Shown: one piece after another, positions 22,914-33,667 of the stretch | Layout: the number at the start of each line of letters is the position of its first letter | Position numbering within the stretch: the first letter of the stretch is position 1 | Virus record (IMG/VR): IMGVR_UViG_3300030616_000016 | Span: 1-64,000 of that record | Strand: one strand, 5' to 3' | Length of the DNA: 64,000 nt | The notes under the pieces: generated by a model | What the model was told of the DNA's origin: nothing | Databases searched by the model: none | What the model saw: only the letters and a program-made list of their open reading frames with translations | Program-made: the position numbers and the translations under genes

Positions 22914-22966
22914 TACCCCTGACAGGAGTCGAACCTGCACGCCCGAAGGCACTAGATTCTAAGTCT
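22914..22966 (-). pseudogene. 3' half of an interrupted tRNA-Leu(TAG)
   Basis: AGACTTAGAATCTAG, variable arm, T arm, then CAGGGGTA; no adjoining 5' half. Confidence 0.85.
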
Positions 22967-23363
22967 TACGGCTAAGTTGTAATCTTCTACACCATTTACC
23001 GACGCACGATTTACCGCAGAATGGACCGTTCATTTTATCTTTCTGTCTGCGGCGTTCATCCTTTGCCATTACCTTTTTTGTATTACCACATTCAACGCAT
23101 ACTATGGTTGTCCATTCTATCTGCTTGCGATGATGATTTATATGTTCCGCTTTTGATTTAATTTCTAAGTTATATATACTATTATTCTGTTTGTTTCCAT
23201 CCTTGTGATGTACAAGTTCAGATGAGTCCAATTTTCTTCCAAGACTCTTCTCCATAACTTCTCGGTGCATCAACACAGTTGCTTTGCTGTCATCGCTGTA
23301 TTTTACTGTACACGCAAGATATCCTTCTAGGTTGAACCAATTAGATCGGTAAACTTCTTTCAT
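22959..23363 (-). CDS. HNH homing endonuclease
   Basis: MHR..., VHHKDGNKQNN..NL; SD GGAG before ATG 23363. Confidence 0.88.
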   Translation of the reverse strand: MKEVYRSNWFNLEGYLACTVKYSDDSKATVLMHREVMEKSLGRKLDSSELVHHKDGNKQNNSIYNLEIKSKAEHINHHRKQIEWTTIVCVECGNTKKVMAKDERRRQKDKMNGPFCGKSCVGKWCRRLQLSRKT

Positions 23364-23384
23364 CTTGATCTCCAAATATAATAA

Positions 23385-23466
23385 TGGGAGTAGAGGGACT
23401 CGAACCCTCACGCCTTGCGGCAACGGTTTCTAAGACCGTCCTGTCTGCCATTTCCAGCATACTCCC
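23385..23466 (-). tRNA. tRNA-Leu(TAG)
   Basis: ACGGT-CTTAGAA-ACCGT, long variable arm. Confidence 0.9.
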
Positions 23467-23468
23467 AA

Positions 23469-23496
23469 AGTATAATATATATCCTAAGAAAGTCAA
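23469..23496 (-). promoter_or_regulatory. sigma70-like promoter TTGACT-N16-TATACT
   Basis: Inside the inserted tRNA-HNH cassette, very close to the tRNA 5' end. Confidence 0.5.
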
Positions 23497-23509
23497 GTAA
23501 AGTGTTTGC

Positions 23510-23545
23510 CTAATCTAGCGTGTATGCCAGTTTCACCACAGGGGC
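23510..23545 (-). pseudogene. 5' half of the interrupted tRNA-Leu(TAG)
   Basis: GCCCCTG-TG-D arm-CTAGATTAG; acceptor strand pairs with the 22914 half. Confidence 0.85.
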
Positions 23546-23641: not shown

Positions 23642-24145
23642 TTATTCTTGATGTTTATGCTTCATCTTTTCTAGTGCAGTTTGTATGATATGATTAATTT
23701 CTACTTCAGATCCACAGAATGGACAGTTCGTTTTATCATGAATACTGCGAATAAAAATGCTTTGTGTTGGTATTTCATCTCTATCTACTTCTCTAAAGCT
23801 GTCATGTTCTAGTATAATAATAATTGCTTTATCACTGTAGTCTACTTCAATGCTCATGATTCGAGACTCGTTAATCTTTACATCTGGATAGTCTTCTATC
23901 ATATAGCAATAGCAGCTATTGTCCATCATACGAAGCAAGGATATAAAATCACAATCAACTTGTATAAATTTACCTGTTTGTGGTAATATAACATTTCTAT
24001 TCATAGTCGAATAAGGTATCCATCCAGATTCACTAGTAGAAGTAGTAGTATGGGTGCTATTATAAGTAAGACCATTCACGAGATTTACTAGTGAATCCAT
24101 ATTAAAACTATTGCTGGTTGAATCATCCGTTGACATGTATCTCAC
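23642..24145 (-). CDS. Hypothetical protein with C-terminal CPFCG
   Basis: ORF; resembles 6740..7048. Confidence 0.55.
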   Translation of the reverse strand: MRYMSTDDSTSNSFNMDSLVNLVNGLTYNSTHTTTSTSESGWIPYSTMNRNVILPQTGKFIQVDCDFISLLRMMDNSCYCYMIEDYPDVKINESRIMSIEVDYSDKAIIIILEHDSFREVDRDEIPTQSIFIRSIHDKTNCPFCGSEVEINHIIQTALEKMKHKHQE

Positions 24146-24425
24146 TCCATATTAAAAAGAATAAACCAGTTGCGGCGTGTGAAAGATGGCTTAGGCCTGA
24201 TTCTTCATCTAGTTTCTCACCCTTACGATATGCTAAAAGATGACGCAAAACGGCGGCATAATATCTATCATTCATGTTTTCTACATGCTTCCAGTTATCG
24301 TCGTCGTATTTCTTTGCGCCGAATGTAAGTACCTTTCCTACTTCTTCTATACATTCAGGTGGAATAAGATCCATGCGGATTTTATCGCCGTCAAACTTCA
24401 TACCATTAGTATCTGACATTCTCAT
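24123..24425 (-). CDS. dATP/dGTP diphosphohydrolase-like (DUF5664)
   Basis: KFDGDK.RMDLIP, GAKKY..NW, RH, D.ESGLSHL.HA. Confidence 0.8.
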   Translation of the reverse strand: MRMSDTNGMKFDGDKIRMDLIPPECIEEVGKVLTFGAKKYDDDNWKHVENMNDRYYAAVLRHLLAYRKGEKLDEESGLSHLSHAATGLFFLIWSEIHVNG

Positions 24426-25030: not shown

Positions 25031-25105
25031 TGGAGCGCCATGTGGGAATCAAACCCACTCCTTCAGGTTGGAGGCCTGACATGCGATCATTAACACCTAT
25101 GGCGC
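25031..25105 (-). tRNA. tRNA-Gly(TCC)
   Basis: TCAGG-CCTCCAA-CCTGA, CCA. Confidence 0.85.
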
Positions 25106-25554: not shown

Positions 25555-25630
25555 TGGTACTCCTGCGAGGACTCGAACCCCGAGAGCCAGATTAGAAATC
25601 TGGTGCTTTGTCCAGTTAAGCAACAGGAGC
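25555..25630 (-). tRNA. tRNA-Arg(TCT)
   Basis: CCAGA-TTTCTAA-TCTGG, CCA. Confidence 0.9.
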
Positions 25631-25631
25631 T

Positions 25632-26234
25632 CTAGTCTTCATCAAGTTCAACATCCCAATAAGCATCAGAAACAAACTTCTGCCATGACACTTTTCTCTT
25701 AAATATAGGTATTTTAAGAGCAGTCATGCCATGAGGCTCAATTGGTTTCTTTCTTAGCTTCATACCAGATTCTGCAGGAGTTCTATTGCCCTTATTGTTG
25801 TTACATTTAACACAGGCAATAACACAGTTCTTCCAGGTAGTTTTACCACCCTGTGCTTTAGGGATGATATGATCAATTGTGGCGTCTGAAGTTTGTAGCT
25901 GAACACCGCAGTATTGACATGAACAGCTATCACGTTTAAATAGATTGCGGCGTGACAGCTTCAACCGATGTGTAGGCATCTTGCCATAGCTAATCAGACG
26001 TATTACTTCAGGCACCTTTACTTCTAGTCTAACAGTTTTTATAAACTGTTCTCCTTCAACGACTTTCAAATCGGCCCATTCCTCAAAATTATATATAGAA
26101 TAGTCATCTGGTAGTATGGCTTGTGCACGGTCTTTAGCCATTAATTCAATGGCATGACGTACAGATGCAAATCCGATTGGCGTCCAGTTTTTGTTTAGTA
26201 CAAGCGTTGGTTCCTGAAGTACCACATTAATCAC
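25632..26234 (-). CDS. HNH endonuclease (McrA-like)
   Basis: LVLN..., RD..CQYCG, TIDHIIP..GG..W.N...C..CN. Confidence 0.9.
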   Translation of the reverse strand: MINVVLQEPTLVLNKNWTPIGFASVRHAIELMAKDRAQAILPDDYSIYNFEEWADLKVVEGEQFIKTVRLEVKVPEVIRLISYGKMPTHRLKLSRRNLFKRDSCSCQYCGVQLQTSDATIDHIIPKAQGGKTTWKNCVIACVKCNNNKGNRTPAESGMKLRKKPIEPHGMTALKIPIFKRKVSWQKFVSDAYWDVELDED

Positions 26235-26253
26235 CTCCTAATTGTGGTATAAA

Positions 26254-26328
26254 TGGCACCCCTGCAAGGATTTAAACCTTGATTAATAGGTCCGTAACCT
26301 ATCGTGTTATTCGTTACACTACAGGAGC
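26254..26328 (-). tRNA. tRNA-Arg(ACG)
   Basis: ATAGG-TTACGGA-CCTAT, CCA. Confidence 0.85.
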
Positions 26329-26507: not shown

Positions 26508-26583
26508 TGGTAGCGGGGCCGGGACTCGAACCCGACTTGGCGGATTATGGGGCCACCCAGACCACCTGGCCTTGCCCCCCGCG
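26508..26583 (-). tRNA. Atypical initiator-like tRNA-Met(CAT)
   Basis: CGCGGGG/CCCCGCT with 1:72 mismatch; loop CCCATAA; CCA. Confidence 0.7.
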
Positions 26584-28594: not shown

Positions 28595-28671
28595 TGGAGC
28601 CTCTGGCGTGGAATTGCACCCGCAACATCTGCTTTACAAGAGCAGCGCTCTACTATTGGAGCTACAGAGGC
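28595..28671 (-). tRNA. tRNA-Thr(TGT)
   Basis: CTGCT-CTTGTAA-AGCAG, CCA. Confidence 0.85.
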
Positions 28672-28989: not shown

Positions 28990-29781
28990 CTATGTATATT
29001 TAGTTTCTGGTGATGCCCATCCAGCAAAATCAGAAATATCTTGCTTATCAAAATCATCTGAATAATGTATCAAGTACATCTTGTCTTTGATTGATTTATC
29101 AAGCATTTTCAAGTCTGCTAATGGAGCATGAACAGCACCAGGAAAGAACTGCACGTCGTGAAACATTATTTTTGACTTATGAGCATACATTTCAATAAGT
29201 TCTGGATCAAATCTTGTGTCACCAGATACAAATATTTTCTCATCAGGAAGATATATACCAAATGATATAAAGGAGCTTTCCCAGTCTGCAGATTGTTCAG
29301 GGATATGTTTGGTTCTGAATATCTCTATATTTATTCCTTGATATTCAACTTCGAATATCTCTCTAGGTTCATGTTGTTTCCATTTAGGTCTAATAACATC
29401 AAAGAAATCTTCAAAATTAAGTTTCTTCATCTGATCGTTTTCTTCATTGTATTCAAGACCACCGCGTAATGTATAATCCCAGAGAATTCTTTGGTAGTTT
29501 TGTTCAATAATCATCTTGAGTTTTGGTTTACCTAGAAACTCTTGGCCGACATATCTATTCATAAGAGCTAGCATTTCTATTCCACCAACATGATCTGCAT
29601 GAGAATGTGTTGGGAGAATACATTCTATATCTATCGGTTGGATTCCTTTATCGGCGATAGCTCTTGGGCCGGTCATGCCAAAATCTACAAAGACATCGCT
29701 TTTTGTACCATGAATGATAAAGTTAGTTTGGTGATTTTTTGCCGCGAAGGCTGATCCAACACCAAGGAATTCGATGCTCAT
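28990..29781 (-). CDS. Metallo-beta-lactamase-fold hydrolase (RNase Z-like)
   Basis: FLGVGSA, THSHADH, SGDT, VHA, HY motifs; located in the tRNA cluster. Confidence 0.8.
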   Translation of the reverse strand: MSIEFLGVGSAFAAKNHQTNFIIHGTKSDVFVDFGMTGPRAIADKGIQPIDIECILPTHSHADHVGGIEMLALMNRYVGQEFLGKPKLKMIIEQNYQRILWDYTLRGGLEYNEENDQMKKLNFEDFFDVIRPKWKQHEPREIFEVEYQGINIEIFRTKHIPEQSADWESSFISFGIYLPDEKIFVSGDTRFDPELIEMYAHKSKIMFHDVQFFPGAVHAPLADLKMLDKSIKDKMYLIHYSDDFDKQDISDFAGWASPETKYT

Positions 29782-31915: not shown

Positions 31916-31962
31916 GAGACGTCCTCCTAGGCTTACTAGCCTTAAAAATTAAAGTGGAATAA

Positions 31963-32038
31963 TGGTGGAGGTGATCGGGATCGAACCGACGACCTCTTGC
32001 TTGCAAAGCAGGCGCTCTCCCAGCTGAGCTACACCCCC
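31963..32038 (-). tRNA. tRNA-Ala(TGC)
   Basis: GGGGGTG acceptor with G3:U70, TTTGCAA loop, CCA. Confidence 0.92.
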
Positions 32039-32289
32039 ACACTGAATATAATTAGTTCCTTTTCCATCTTTTGGCCACTCAGGGCTTGTCTTGTTAATAA
32101 ACTTATGAAAGTCGAGAATCTTACCATTATCGATAACTAATAGTTTATTACAAGATGGACAGTCTACCGTAGCGCCTTCGGCCTCTTTGATGGAATTACA
32201 GTTGACATCAAATTCAGAATTGCATTCTACACAAACCAACTTAATCATGGTATTACTCCTGAATAATGGTCTCATTATTGAATAATAAA

Positions 32290-32373
32290 TCGGGACGGGA
32301 GGATTTGAACCTCCGAGGGCATTAATGCCACCTGGTCCCAAACATAGCGTTATAGCAGATTTAGCTATAGACC
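32290..32373 (-). pseudogene. Damaged tRNA(TGG) with an intact 3' half (long variable arm) and a diverged 5' half
   Basis: TTTGGGA-CCAGG...GGTTCAAATCC-CGTCCCGA; 5' strand does not pair. Confidence 0.7.
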
Positions 32374-32874
32374 AATATTTTTAATTTGTCCATTATGAAA
32401 TGCGGCATGACAATTTTTACACAATACAGTGCATTTTTTAAGCTCAGACTCTAATCTCTTCCATGACCAATATCTCATTGTTTTAAATGATTGGTCCTTA
32501 ACATTAGGGTCTATATGGTGAATATCCAAAGAGCAAATGAATTTATTGAATCCACAATGCATGCACTTCCCGCCTAAAAACTCCACTGCCTTTTGTCTTG
32601 TTTCTTTTGCCTTTTTGTTATTATACGCATTCTGACATTTGCCGCAAATACTCTTTTTATGTCCATAAAACTTTTTGGGATCCGTCTCTCCACAAGAACA
32701 TTTCCTTATAGTGGCCATATCTTTTGGGAGTTTTCCTTTTGGTCCACGCCTAGTTTTCAATCCAAATTTTTTCAACCAATATCTAACACAGTCCTGAGAT
32801 ACTGACAATTTGTCTGATATCTGGCGTAAGCTCAAACCTTCTTCTATTAATTTATTTAAAATATTCTGTTCCAT
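32365..32874 (-). CDS. HTH-HNH endonuclease
   Basis: N-terminal HTH; GGKCMHCG...LDIHH...KCTVLCKNCH. Confidence 0.85.
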   Translation of the reverse strand: MEQNILNKLIEEGLSLRQISDKLSVSQDCVRYWLKKFGLKTRRGPKGKLPKDMATIRKCSCGETDPKKFYGHKKSICGKCQNAYNNKKAKETRQKAVEFLGGKCMHCGFNKFICSLDIHHIDPNVKDQSFKTMRYWSWKRLESELKKCTVLCKNCHAAFHNGQIKNIGL

Positions 32875-32881
32875 GTAGAGT

Positions 32882-32909
32882 ATTATAACACAGGTTTAAA
32901 AAATGTCAA
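32882..32909 (-). promoter_or_regulatory. sigma70-like promoter TTGACA-N16-TATAAT (likely leaderless HNH mRNA)
   Basis: Perfect hexamers; ATG 7 nt after the -10. Confidence 0.75.
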
Positions 32910-33044
32910 TTTAAGATATCTGCATCTCTATTATTATTTCAAATTACGGTGCGAATCAATGGGCTTTAACCATCGGTCTTTGGCGCTAGTCATAAAGTAT
33001 GCACCAATATTCTTCTAGGTAGGACTAATTCCATACTGAATAAA

Positions 33045-33122
33045 TGGTCCGGGTAGCTGGATTCGGACCAGCGGTTTCCACGCCCCAAACGTGGCGGGAT
33101 GACCAAGCTTCCCCATACCCGG
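33045..33122 (-). tRNA. tRNA-Pro(TGG)
   Basis: CCACG-TTTGGGG-CGTGG, CCA. Confidence 0.85.
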
Positions 33123-33133
33123 ACAGAATTTAA

Positions 33134-33211
33134 TGGCGGGACCAACGAGAGTCGCACTCGCTTCACTCCACCTTGACAGGGTGGCGGCTCCACTACTTTG
33201 CCCTTGGCCCC
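33134..33211 (-). tRNA. tRNA-Asp(GTC)
   Basis: CCACC-CTGTCAA-GGTGG, CCA. Confidence 0.85.
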
Positions 33212-33238
33212 ATGGATATTGGTAGTTCTTATCTAACA

Positions 33239-33667
33239 TTACGATTTTATTGCCATAAATATTATTGCTATGATAGTCACTATTTGGACTATTCCAAATA
33301 CAGGCCAAAATCTTTTTGTATGTTTATCTAATACTTCTTTATGTTTACTATAATAATTTTTATCGCAACATAGCTGGACACTTTTTATATAGCTTGCAGG
33401 ATATTTGGTGTTTGTACTATAATCACTAAATCCTTCTCTTGCTATTTCAGCAGTATCTAGTTGTGATATAAATGAATTTTCGGCAGGGGTATCAATCTTT
33501 TTGCCATCTATCAGTGTAACTCTAATAAAAGATTCATCTTCACGTTCGATCTCATCTTGTGCTTTAGTATATAGAATTGCAGCTGTTACAGCGGCACAGA
33601 AACCAAAGTCAAATAACAAAAATATAAATGTTACTGCGATATTATAAGTCATTTTACTTCCTTCCAA
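33239..33667 (-). CDS. Membrane protein (2 TM)
   Basis: Hydrophobic N- and C-terminal segments. Confidence 0.55.
   Translation of the reverse strand: MEGSKMTYNIAVTFIFLLFDFGFCAAVTAAILYTKAQDEIEREDESFIRVTLIDGKKIDTPAENSFISQLDTAEIAREGFSDYSTNTKYPASYIKSVQLCCDKNYYSKHKEVLDKHTKRFWPVFGIVQIVTIIAIIFMAIKS

What the first reader, a model, noticed from the sequence alone, without database searches (positions are those of the whole stretch)
32290..33122. Second HNH flanked by a damaged and an intact tRNA of the same anticodon (TGG)
Seen: an intact tRNA-Pro(TGG) (33122-33045), a perfect promoter and an HTH-HNH gene that ends inside a tRNA(TGG). That tRNA has an intact 3' half but a non-pairing 5' half, and a long variable arm, which is abnormal for Pro. 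This parallels the Leu cassette and suggests a recurring replace-and-disrupt strategy.
Basis: partly seen in the sequence, partly recalled or inferred. Interest (0 to 1): 0.6.

Follow-up and report, generated by a model that had tools for sequence, protein, structure and literature searches.

The report
HNH homing gene beside dead tRNA-Pro
A selfish HNH nuclease gene, from a family that usually sits fused to the front end of phage proline-tRNA genes, lies here between the phage's one working tRNA-Pro and a decayed second copy; it shows how mobile nucleases reshape phage tRNA arrays but belongs to a known kind of system.

Summary
On the minus strand lie an intact tRNA-Pro(UGG) (33122-33045), a 12/12 sigma-70 promoter with a TG extension (32909-32882), a 169-aa HTH/zinc/HNH ORF (32874-32365) and an 85-nt tRNA-Pro relic (32374-32290). 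ARAGORN and Infernal do not call the relic.

The ORF belongs to a large uncharacterised family of free-standing HNH homing genes in phage tRNA arrays.
- In 58 of 89 related loci (19 of 37 clusters), the ORF's stop codon lies inside or next to the 5' end of a tRNA-Pro.
- At one tRNA-Pro type the gene is present in 42 phage contigs and absent in 76.
- So ending inside a tRNA is normal for this family and is not damage in itself.

Several relatives carry tRNA-Pro on both sides of the gene, with only one good copy. The pair L010/L011 shows the downstream copy being lost by deletion.

My preferred reading is that the homing gene brought together two tRNA-Pro genes of different descent (56% identical), and the redundant copy overlapped by the ORF then decayed.

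A true insert-and-replace cassette does exist 9 kb away, where a tRNA-Leu(UAG) is split around an HNH gene plus a spare tRNA-Leu. For Pro that route is possible but not shown, because no close relatives of this marine-sediment jumbo phage were found.

The parts
33045..33122 (-). Intact tRNA-Pro(UGG) with encoded CCA. It is the only tRNA-Pro called in the genome.
   Evidence: ARAGORN; Infernal tRNA model 53.6 bits against a gathering score of 29.
32910..33044 (-). 135-nt spacer between the intact tRNA-Pro and the promoter, with no recognisable feature. The matching spacer in related tandem loci is only about 25-36 nt.
   Evidence: No Rfam match at E<=10; only sub-threshold ARAGORN noise; spacers in L010, L022 and L100 seen.
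32882..32909 (-). Sigma-70 promoter TTGACA-16-TATAAT with a TG extension. It ends 7 nt before the ATG, so the mRNA is predicted to be leaderless or nearly so. The core CTGTGTTATA plus about 8 nt plus ATG is conserved upstream of homologous HNH genes.
   Evidence: Scan finds a 12/12 match. Only 5 such sites in 231 kb. The same extended -10 motif occurs in L009, L010, L021 and L100, with close variants in L002 and L022. The transcription start is inferred, not shown.
32365..32874 (-). Free-standing HTH / zinc-knuckle / HNH homing endonuclease gene, 169 aa. It is the only copy of this family in the genome.
   Evidence: ORF. PHROG 2255 'HNH endonuclease' at E=3.4e-25. Pfam HTH_23 and HNH_2 match below their cut-offs. 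214 homologues found. Invariant residues include C59, C61, C77, C80, C104, C107, H119, H120, C152, C155, H156 and H160. AF2 model pLDDT 90.9; best fold matches are HNH domains, though weak. Single copy.
32290..32374 (-). Pseudo-tRNA-Pro(UGG), 85 nt and colinear with a tRNA. The 5' acceptor remnant (32374-32368) and the stop codon at tRNA positions 8-10 (32367-32365) overlap the end of the HNH ORF.
   Evidence: Alignment A2 keeps every invariant column: T8, A14, a D-loop G, T33-G36, the T loop, G72 and A73. No tRNA call. The relic without its palindrome is 62% (median) to 69% identical to family tRNA-Pro genes and 56% identical to the intact copy.
32336..32342 (-). Former anticodon loop TTTGGGA (anticodon TGG at 32340-32338). 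Its stem pairs at only 3 of 5 positions.
   Evidence: Read from the sequence; alignment A2.
32318..32329 (-). Perfect 12-nt palindrome GGCATTAATGCC inserted in the variable region. This is the 'long variable arm'. Origin unknown.
   Evidence: About 11 extra columns relative to all 18 other tRNA-Pro genes in A2; occurs once in the genome.
32290..32314 (-). Intact T arm (GGAGG / TTCAAAT / CCTCC), then the 3' acceptor strand CGTCCCG and discriminator A. No CCA follows.
   Evidence: Sequence; T-arm regex hit. The acceptor plus discriminator is the same as in the intact tRNA-Pro that follows the HNH homologue in L003.

Best explanation
The ORF is a free-standing HNH homing endonuclease gene. Its family specialises in tRNA genes of phage tRNA arrays, most often tRNA-Pro(UGG).

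Family members carry their own extended -10 promoter. They sit directly in front of the tRNA, and their last codons and stop codon lie inside the tRNA's 5' end.

In the lineage nearest to the window, the gene is flanked by tRNA-Pro on both sides, and only one copy stays good. In this phage the upstream copy is the working tRNA-Pro. The copy fused to the end of the ORF became redundant and decayed: mispairs accumulated in the acceptor, D and anticodon stems, and a 12-bp palindrome was inserted in the variable loop. Its first 10 nt survive only as HNH codons.

Shown:
- the anatomy of the locus;
- the link between this family and tRNA-Pro;
- presence/absence of the gene at homologous sites in related phages;
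- repeated cases of one good and one bad tRNA copy;
- a deletion that removed the 5' part of the downstream copy in L011.

Inferred:
- nuclease activity and a target inside tRNA-Pro;
- that the two copies were brought together by homing or recombination;
- that decay followed redundancy.
For: Family and mobility:
- 214 homologues in the protein database and 495 in IMG/VR.
- A tRNA-Pro starts -24 to +7 nt from the stop codon in 58 of 89 loci, which is 19 of 37 clusters at 80% identity. This includes the nearest usable relative, L002, at 63% identity.
- Among 118 phage contigs sharing one tRNA-Pro motif, 42 carry the gene and 76 do not.
- The occupied locus L106 and the empty locus L204 align on both sides of a 380-nt versus 55-nt difference that ends at tRNA position 1.

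Tandem loci, Infernal bits for the upstream / downstream tRNA-Pro (ARAGORN):
- window 53.6 / none
- L022 60.9 / none
- L021 54.8 / 19.8
- L010 60.4 / called by ARAGORN only
- L100 57.1 / 44.1
- L020 called by ARAGORN only / 64.9

Decay after insertion: L011 encodes the same HNH protein as L010 but has lost the 5' part of the downstream copy by a deletion of about 60 nt.

The relic itself:
- It is full length and in register. The stop codon falls at U8-A9-G10, as in L003 and L020, and lies 22 nt before the anticodon loop (21 and 23 nt in those two loci).
- The two copies are only 56% identical, so they are not a recent local duplication.

Precedent: the segB ORF of phage T4 also abuts its downstream tRNA, so that tRNA-Arg maturation cuts between its last codon and its stop codon (PMC2330249). 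SegB drives tandem duplication of tRNA-Tyr plus segB (PMC13096335).
Against: - No close relative of this phage exists in the collections I searched, so the order of events here is inferred by analogy. Laid contigs show no allele lacking the HNH.
- Damage is concentrated in the 5' two-thirds while the last 25 nt are flawless. My rough estimate of the probability of this under uniform decay is about 0.1. It could instead mark a recombination joint or selection on the 3' part.
- The same genome holds a true split-and-replace cassette at tRNA-Leu, so that route is available to this phage.
- The 135-nt spacer and the palindrome are unexplained.
- Nuclease activity and target are untested.
Confidence: 0.6

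Rival explanations
1. One reading: a composite cassette (spare tRNA-Pro + promoter + HNH) inserted into the resident tRNA-Pro gene. It destroyed the gene's 5' half at once while bringing its own replacement.
For: - This layout exists 9 kb away. The halves of a tRNA-Leu(UAG) (23545-23510 and 22958-22914) flank a promoter, an intact tRNA-Leu(UAG) and an HNH_3 gene. Their acceptor strands pair 7/7, and the joined halves fold as a complete tRNA.
- L028/L030 show the same layout for tRNA-Ala in this HNH family. L004, L023 and L026 also have flanking halves that pair 7/7.
- The two Pro copies are only 56% identical, as expected for different origins.
Against: - No 5' fragment able to pair with CGTCCCG and followed by a D arm lies anywhere in 30-36 kb.
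- In the Leu and Ala cases the ORF ends at the joint in the anticodon loop. Here the stop sits at tRNA positions 8-10, followed by a colinear, partly paired D-arm and anticodon-stem region (D stem 3/4). This is the family's normal non-disruptive register.
Confidence: 0.25
2. The relic is kept for a function. It might be a structured 3' end for the HNH mRNA. A broken acceptor stem would stop RNase P from cutting off the stop codon, as is proposed to happen to segB. It might also serve as a homology arm or a protected recognition site for homing, or as a decoy for tRNA-targeting host defences.
For: - The T arm and 3' acceptor strand are flawless, while the 5' part is degraded.
- The RNA is predicted to refold. 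The former anticodon loop pairs with the 3' acceptor strand over 7 bp and, with the palindrome hairpin and the T arm, forms a three-way junction. MFE is -28.3 kcal/mol, z = -2.45.
- Relatives L009, L021 and L022 share an odd tRNA-Pro-like element downstream that ARAGORN does not call.
- Processing of a tRNA precursor is proposed to cut segB mRNA between its last codon and its stop codon (PMC2330249).
Against: - No covariation or conservation test is possible for this locus.
- The refolding is partly built into any tRNA-Pro, because UGGG in the anticodon loop complements CCCG/CCCA in the acceptor strand.
- The z-score is modest.
- L011 lost the 5' part of its downstream copy and several clades have no downstream tRNA at all, yet the ORF stays open in them.
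Confidence: 0.1
3. The resemblance to a tRNA is chance, or the element is half of a split or intron-containing tRNA that is still functional.
For: tRNA finders do not call it. With very long introns allowed, ARAGORN can join the 5' end of the intact tRNA-Pro to this 3' end.
Against: - Chance of a T arm at this spot is about 0.004, and the position is homologous to the family's tRNA-Pro partner.
- The intact tRNA-Pro has its own complete 3' half.
- There is no group I intron or other ribozyme match in 32200-33300.
- The intervening DNA is almost filled by the ORF, its promoter and a featureless 135-nt spacer that has no Rfam match.
Confidence: 0.03

Closest known systems
Phage T4/T6 SegB, a free-standing GIY-YIG homing endonuclease in the tRNA gene cluster (PMC2330249; PMC13096335)
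   Same: - A free-standing nuclease gene inside a phage tRNA array that targets tRNA genes.
- The ORF abuts the downstream tRNA, so that tRNA maturation is proposed to cut the mRNA between its last codon and its stop codon.
- Presence/absence among related phages.
- SegB cleavage plus recombination makes tandem tRNA-Tyr/segB repeats through microhomology between the tRNA 5' end and the segB 3' end.
   Different: - A different nuclease fold (HNH with an HTH and zinc knuckle, not GIY-YIG).
- SegB shows no isotype preference (PMC13096335), while this family is tied to tRNA-Pro(UGG) in most clusters.
- Here the flanking copies are diverged (56%), and one is a pseudogene rather than a fresh repeat.
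- Activity is untested.
[quoted passage not shown] 2004, as cited in PMC2330249)
   Same: Endonuclease ORFs located within a phage tRNA gene cluster, with expression thought to be limited by tRNA precursor processing.
   Different: I could not read the primary paper or compare sequences. That they are of the HNH type is my recollection, not stated in the cited text. The tblastn hits to T5-unrelated phages (Vequintavirus, Salmonella phages 7t3 and Arash) say nothing about kinship to F-Tfl. No link to tRNA-Pro and no flanking pseudo-tRNA is known to me for T5.
Integrating elements that insert into tRNA genes and carry a replacement copy of the displaced tRNA end (general knowledge of tRNA-gene att sites)
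   Same: The mobile DNA restores the interrupted tRNA by carrying a substitute. This leaves a tRNA fragment at one border, as in the window's Leu cassette, L028 and L004.
   Different: Those elements use integrases and short identical att repeats and replace the 3' end. Here there is no integrase, the spare is a whole and diverged tRNA gene, and mobility would be by double-strand-break repair.

Membership tests
HNH (beta-beta-alpha-Me) endonuclease superfamily | Catalytic His...Asn...His signature with zinc-binding CxxC pairs | tested here: met
   DIHH (H119, H120) and CKNCH (C152, C155, H156) are present in the window protein. Those residues plus H160 and C104/C107 are invariant across 46 homologues.
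HNH (beta-beta-alpha-Me) endonuclease superfamily | Significant match to curated family profiles | tested here: inconclusive
   Pfam HNH_2 gives 17.3 bits against a cut-off of 21. PHROG 2255 'HNH endonuclease' gives E=3.4e-25, and ten further PHROGs match, eight of them annotated HNH. A PDB profile search finds only weak hits to the LtrA endonuclease domain and McrA.
HNH (beta-beta-alpha-Me) endonuclease superfamily | HNH fold | tested here: inconclusive
   The AF2 model has pLDDT 90.9. The top Foldseek matches are nearly all HNH domains (Cap5, Cas9 HNH, McrA, Gme HNH nickase, T5 SciA), but with E values of 0.04-0.3 and TM scores near 0.25 over the whole model.
HNH (beta-beta-alpha-Me) endonuclease superfamily | DNA cleavage or nicking activity | not testable with these tools
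   Needs purified protein and tRNA-Pro gene substrates.
Free-standing homing endonuclease gene of phage tRNA arrays (SegB-like in behaviour) | Present or absent at the same site in otherwise homologous genomes | tested here: met
   Shown for the family: 42 occupied and 76 empty among 118 contigs with one tRNA-Pro motif. Flank alignment of L106 against L204 confirms a homologous site. Not testable for the window's own phage, which has no close relatives.
Free-standing homing endonuclease gene of phage tRNA arrays (SegB-like in behaviour) | Not embedded in an intron or intein; has its own expression signals | tested here: met
   Has its own 12/12 promoter. No ribozyme match in 32200-33300. The ORF is intergenic and reads into the next tRNA.
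Free-standing homing endonuclease gene of phage tRNA arrays (SegB-like in behaviour) | Cuts the allele that lacks the gene near the insertion site and is copied in by repair | not testable with these tools
   Needs cleavage mapping and mixed-infection crosses.
Functional tRNA (for the element at 32374-32290) | Cloverleaf that reaches tRNA model thresholds | tested here: not met
   No Infernal tRNA hit at E<=10. No ARAGORN call at 60-80% thresholds. Acceptor pairs 4/7 and anticodon stem 3/5, with a 12-nt insertion.
Intron-containing or split tRNA gene | Matching 5' exon or half, and a self-splicing intron or a partner half | tested here: not met
   No 5' partner for CGTCCCG with a D arm in 30-36 kb. 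No group I or II intron match. The nearby intact tRNA-Pro is complete on its own.

The most novel reading that the evidence does not exclude
These HNH genes travel as self-complementing units: nuclease gene, own promoter and a spare or overlapping tRNA. This lets them invade a useful tRNA gene in unrelated phages without costing the phage that tRNA.

The leftover copy would then not be mere debris. After duplication, one copy serves as the tRNA. The other is kept as the ORF's end and 3' structure, with a disabled acceptor stem so that RNase P no longer removes the stop codon. It may also act as a homology arm for the next homing event.
Probability: 0.22. Interest if true: 0.65.

Novelty: new variant of a known kind. 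Interest (0 to 1): 0.45.

Why it matters
Phage tRNA arrays are now seen as anti-defence and codon-supply modules, and homing endonucleases as drivers of their change (SegB, 2026).

This locus and its roughly 500 relatives add three things:
- An HNH family bound to one isoacceptor, with its ORF fused onto the tRNA.
- A series of natural stages: empty site, simple insertion, tandem tRNAs, one copy decayed, and a resident gene split around a spare copy.
- A ready comparative data set for asking how a nuclease can target a conserved, useful gene without costing its carrier that gene.

It also explains many 'pseudo-tRNA' and tRNA-fragment calls in phage genomes.

For this window alone it is a well-explained, moderately interesting case.

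Tried and rejected
- Close relatives of the window phage. I tried search for related loci with the HNH and with the upstream 142-aa protein, a protein word search with that neighbour (self only) and exact tRNA-Pro 28-mers in IMG/VR.
- The 3' 25-mer of the relic in IMG/VR. It hit only unrelated tRNA 3' ends and a tRNA-Ile, which was not informative.
- Sequencing runs. Only Logan contigs from two marine-sediment metagenomes were available. One 1,083-nt contig reproduces 32009-33091 exactly. There were no joints showing an allele without the HNH and no RNA data. Depth spikes at the tRNA-Ala gene and at the relic's 3' end probably come from other organisms' tRNA genes.
- Intron or split-tRNA reading. 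ARAGORN with long introns made only low-grade chimeras, and Rfam found no ribozyme. Rejected.
- A 5' fragment of a split tRNA-Pro in the window. None was found.
- A tRNA relic in the 135-nt spacer. Only an ARAGORN hit at the 60% threshold, among many such hits. Rejected as noise.
- The palindrome as a repeated element. It is unique in the genome, and its origin is unexplained.
- An intrinsic terminator after the ORF. None was found.
- Selective retention of the relic's 3' part. My rough estimate is p about 0.1, so it is not established.
- Literature on an HNH/tRNA-Pro association or on homing cassettes that carry a spare tRNA. Nothing was found in the searchable library. That library is incomplete.

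No other genetic code was used.

Full report
**Setting.** The window is the first 64 kb of a 231,647-bp IMG/VR virus record that CheckV rates 95% complete. Contigs of this phage occur in two marine-sediment metagenomes. A tRNA array runs on the minus strand from about 23.3 to 35.7 kb.
- ARAGORN tRNAs.
- Infernal adds tRNA-Thr(UGU) at 28671-28598 and tRNA-Gly(UCC) at 25105-25034, plus weaker tRNA-like elements.
- At least three HNH genes of different Pfam types lie between the tRNAs.

**The observation.**
- The intact tRNA-Pro(UGG) is at 33122-33045 (53.6 bits). It is the only tRNA-Pro in the genome.
- After a 135-nt spacer comes a promoter, TTGACA-16-TATAAT with a TG extension, at 32909-32882. 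It matches 12/12 and is one of five such sites in the genome.
- The promoter ends 7 nt before the ATG of a 169-aa ORF (32874-32365), and there is no ribosome-binding site. A leaderless mRNA is therefore predicted. This is an inference.
- The ORF's stop codon TAG lies where U8-A9-G10 of a tRNA would be.
- From 32374 to 32290 the sequence aligns column for column with tRNA-Pro genes of related loci. It keeps every invariant column of that alignment (A2).
- Its stems pair as follows: acceptor 4/7, D 3/4, anticodon 3/5, T arm 5/5.
- A perfect 12-nt palindrome, unique in the genome, is inserted in the variable loop.
- Neither Infernal at E<=10 nor relaxed ARAGORN calls it a tRNA.
- A T arm at this spot is not chance: about 0.004, from 12 orphan T-arm motifs in 463 kb.

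**What the ORF is.**
- Pfam gives only sub-threshold HTH and HNH_2 matches. PHROG 2255, annotated 'HNH endonuclease', matches at E=3.4e-25.
- 214 homologues of about 167 aa share an N-terminal helix-turn-helix, a CxC...CxxC knuckle and an HNH core: CxxC, HH, CxxCH, H.
- The AF2 model is confident (pLDDT 90.9). Its best structural matches, though weak, are nearly all HNH nuclease domains.
- The genome has one copy.

**The family is tied to tRNA-Pro.** I fetched 9 metagenomic loci and 80 IMG/VR loci, out of 495 relatives found there.
- In 58 of 89 loci a tRNA-Pro starts between -24 and +7 nt from the stop codon (57 UGG, 1 CGG). Most often it starts 15 nt before the end of the ORF, which puts the stop in the D loop.
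- Collapsed at 80% protein identity, this is 19 of 37 clusters. About six more clusters, the window included, have a tRNA-Pro-like remnant at that place.
- Other clades sit next to tRNA-Thr, tRNA-Ala or tRNA-Val.
- In a quick tree the window protein falls in a group whose members are nearly all tRNA-Pro-associated. Its nearest relative is L002, at 63% identity.
- The extended -10 core CTGTGTTATA, followed by about 8 nt and the ATG, recurs upstream of homologues in L009, L010, L021 and L100, with close variants in L002 and L022. The promoter therefore belongs to the unit.

**The family is mobile.** A 23-nt motif from the tRNA-Pro of one clade retrieved 118 phage contigs with enough upstream sequence. 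The HNH lies in front of the tRNA in 42 of them and is missing in 76.
- The occupied locus L106 and the empty locus L204 align upstream (82% identity) and across the tRNA (89%).
- They differ by 380 nt versus 55 nt, and the difference ends at tRNA position 1.
- Occupied and empty alleles share that 5' motif, and the tRNA-Pro behind the gene is still called by ARAGORN in occupied loci.
- So reading into the tRNA does not damage it. 'Ends inside a tRNA' is the family's normal state.
- T4 segB has a similar geometry with tRNA-Arg. Maturation of that tRNA is proposed to cut the mRNA between its last codon and its stop codon (PMC2330249).

**Duplicated and broken tRNAs around the gene.** In the clade nearest the window, the gene often has tRNA-Pro on both sides, and usually only one copy is good.

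| Locus | Upstream tRNA-Pro (Infernal bits) | Downstream tRNA-Pro (Infernal bits) |
|---|---|---|
| window | 53.6 | none |
| L022 | 60.9 | none |
| L021 | 54.8 | 19.8 |
| L010 | 60.4 | ARAGORN call only |
| L100 | 57.1 | 44.1 |
| L020 | ARAGORN call only | 64.9 |

- L011 encodes the identical protein to L010, but a deletion of about 60 nt has removed the 5' part of the downstream copy. This is the window's layout reached by a different lesion, after the gene was already in place.
- Other loci keep only a 5' fragment (acceptor strand plus D arm) upstream of the gene: L004, L006, L007, L008, L020, L023, L026, L065 and L097.
- In L008, L023, L026 and L028/L030, the 5' fragment upstream and a 3' acceptor strand downstream pair 7/7. 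By eye the same holds for L004, where the matching 3' fragment lies after the cassette's own intact tRNA-Pro.
- In L004 and L028 the matching halves enclose the HNH together with an intact spare tRNA. In L023 the two halves flank the HNH alone, with no replacement copy.

**The Leu cassette in the window.**
- A 5' half of tRNA-Leu(UAG) lies at 23545-23510 and its 3' half at 22958-22914.
- Between them are a promoter, an intact but different tRNA-Leu(UAG) (23467-23384) and an HNH_3 gene with a ribosome-binding site.
- The stop codon of that HNH_3 gene is the old anticodon TAG.
- The joined halves fold as a complete class II tRNA, with a 7/7 acceptor stem and a 5/5 anticodon stem.

**Which route produced the Pro locus?** Two histories fit.
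- (a) The relic is the family's usual partner tRNA, or the resident target that the gene parked on. It decayed once a second tRNA-Pro made it redundant.
- (b) A cassette of spare tRNA-Pro plus HNH was inserted into the resident gene and broke it at once, as at Leu.

I prefer (a) for these reasons:
- The relic is full length.
- Its stop codon is in the same register as in L003 and L020.
- The distance from the stop to the anticodon loop is 22 nt (21 and 23 nt in those loci).
- T8, A14 and a D-loop G are kept.
- No 5' fragment of a split gene exists nearby.

In favour of (b), or of a mixed history:
- The two copies are only 56% identical, so they have different origins.
- All the damage lies 5' of the T arm.

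I cannot separate the two firmly without relatives, and none were found. Laid contigs confirm the arrangement but show no allele lacking the HNH.

**Mechanism.** This part is inferred.
- The protein is probably a site-specific nickase or nuclease whose target lies in or beside tRNA-Pro genes of co-infecting phages. Repair from the carrier genome would copy the gene in.
- tRNA sequence on one or both sides would give homology even between otherwise unrelated phages. It would also explain the duplications.
- SegB shows experimentally that cleavage plus recombination between a tRNA 5' end and the nuclease gene's 3' end makes tandem tRNA/nuclease repeats (PMC13096335).
- After fixation, one of two isoacceptor copies is free to decay.

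A more adventurous reading is that the decayed copy is useful. Its broken acceptor stem would stop RNase P from removing the stop codon, and the RNA is predicted to refold into a compact three-way junction. There is no conservation evidence for this.

**Comparison and novelty.** Free-standing homing genes in phage tRNA clusters, the ORF/tRNA overlap and nuclease-driven tRNA duplication are all known (PMC2330249; PMC13096335; T5 F-Tfl enzymes as cited there). This family differs in three ways:
- It has an HNH fold with an HTH.
- It is tied to one isoacceptor, whereas SegB shows no isotype preference.
- It has a recurrent set of intact/decayed pairs and split resident genes with a spare copy.

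I found no description of these features in the searchable literature, which is incomplete. I rate it a new variant of a known kind, with moderate interest.

Noticed in passing
window 22914-23545 (-): A resident tRNA-Leu(UAG) is split in its anticodon loop into a 5' half (23545-23510) and a 3' half (22958-22914). Between them lie a promoter (TTGACT-17-TATACT), an intact and different tRNA-Leu(UAG) (23467-23384) and an HNH_3 gene (ATG at about 23362, ending at 22959). That gene's stop codon is the old anticodon TAG. The joined halves fold as a complete tRNA in ARAGORN.
   Followed up: yes
window 25555-26328 (-): A third HNH gene (HNH_5 type, 26234-25632) lies between tRNA-Arg(ACG) and tRNA-Arg(UCU). 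Both tRNAs begin with the same 8 nt, GCTCCTGT. The gene's stop is 1 nt before the second tRNA. So all three HNH genes in the array sit between tRNAs for the same amino acid.
   Followed up: partly
window 33134-33212 (-): A tRNA-Asp(GUC)-like gene lies just upstream of tRNA-Pro. It scores 27.4 bits, just under the Rfam gathering score, and ARAGORN does not call it. It has a paired acceptor stem, encoded CCA and an unusual T loop, TGCGACT, with G where the second T normally is. The same T-loop type occurs in several tRNAs of related loci.
   Followed up: partly
window 28598-28671, 25034-25105, 26513-26582 (-): Infernal finds tRNA genes that default ARAGORN missed: tRNA-Thr(UGU) and tRNA-Gly(UCC). 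There is also a weak CAU-anticodon tRNA-like element with a good T arm.
   Followed up: partly
window 31949-32248 (-): The zinc-ribbon ORF that follows the tRNA-Pro relic has no stop codon before tRNA-Ala (32038-31963). It reads right through that tRNA to 31949. Maturation of the tRNA would therefore cut its mRNA, the same ORF-into-tRNA geometry as the HNH.
   Followed up: no
window 28990-29781 (-) and 24123-24425 (-): Inside the tRNA array there is an Apyc1-type anti-Pycsar metallo-beta-lactamase-fold protein (Pfam E=3.6e-31) and a dATP/dGTP diphosphohydrolase N-terminal domain protein (E=2.3e-33).
   Followed up: no
L009:3529-3612, L021:1111-1178, L022:1120-1195, L010:3606-3680: The tRNA-Pro-like elements downstream of the HNH in this clade share odd features: C instead of U at position 33 next to the UGG anticodon, a T loop of type TGCAAnT or TGCGAGT, and a D arm that contains the ORF's TAA. 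They keep full acceptor pairing but score poorly or not at all as tRNAs.
   Followed up: partly
L009:about 2854-2965 and L021:419-518: In these loci the upstream tRNA-Pro carries an insertion of roughly 25-45 nt in the anticodon loop. The L021 copy still scores 54.8 bits as a tRNA.
   Followed up: no
L034, L036, L043, and L052/L079/L082/L083/L087 (about 50 nt upstream of the ATG): In these clades the HNH gene is preceded by a T4-late-promoter-like TATAAATA box set inside an inverted repeat, rather than by the extended -10 promoter. In the L052 clade the C-terminal coding region contains a tRNA-Val(UAC)-like anticodon arm.
   Followed up: no
G000:C1 93947 and 94113 (-), outside the window: Two orphan T-arm-like motifs with G+C-rich 5-bp stems lie 166 nt apart, far from the tRNA array. 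They could be further tRNA relics or uncalled tRNAs.
   Followed up: no
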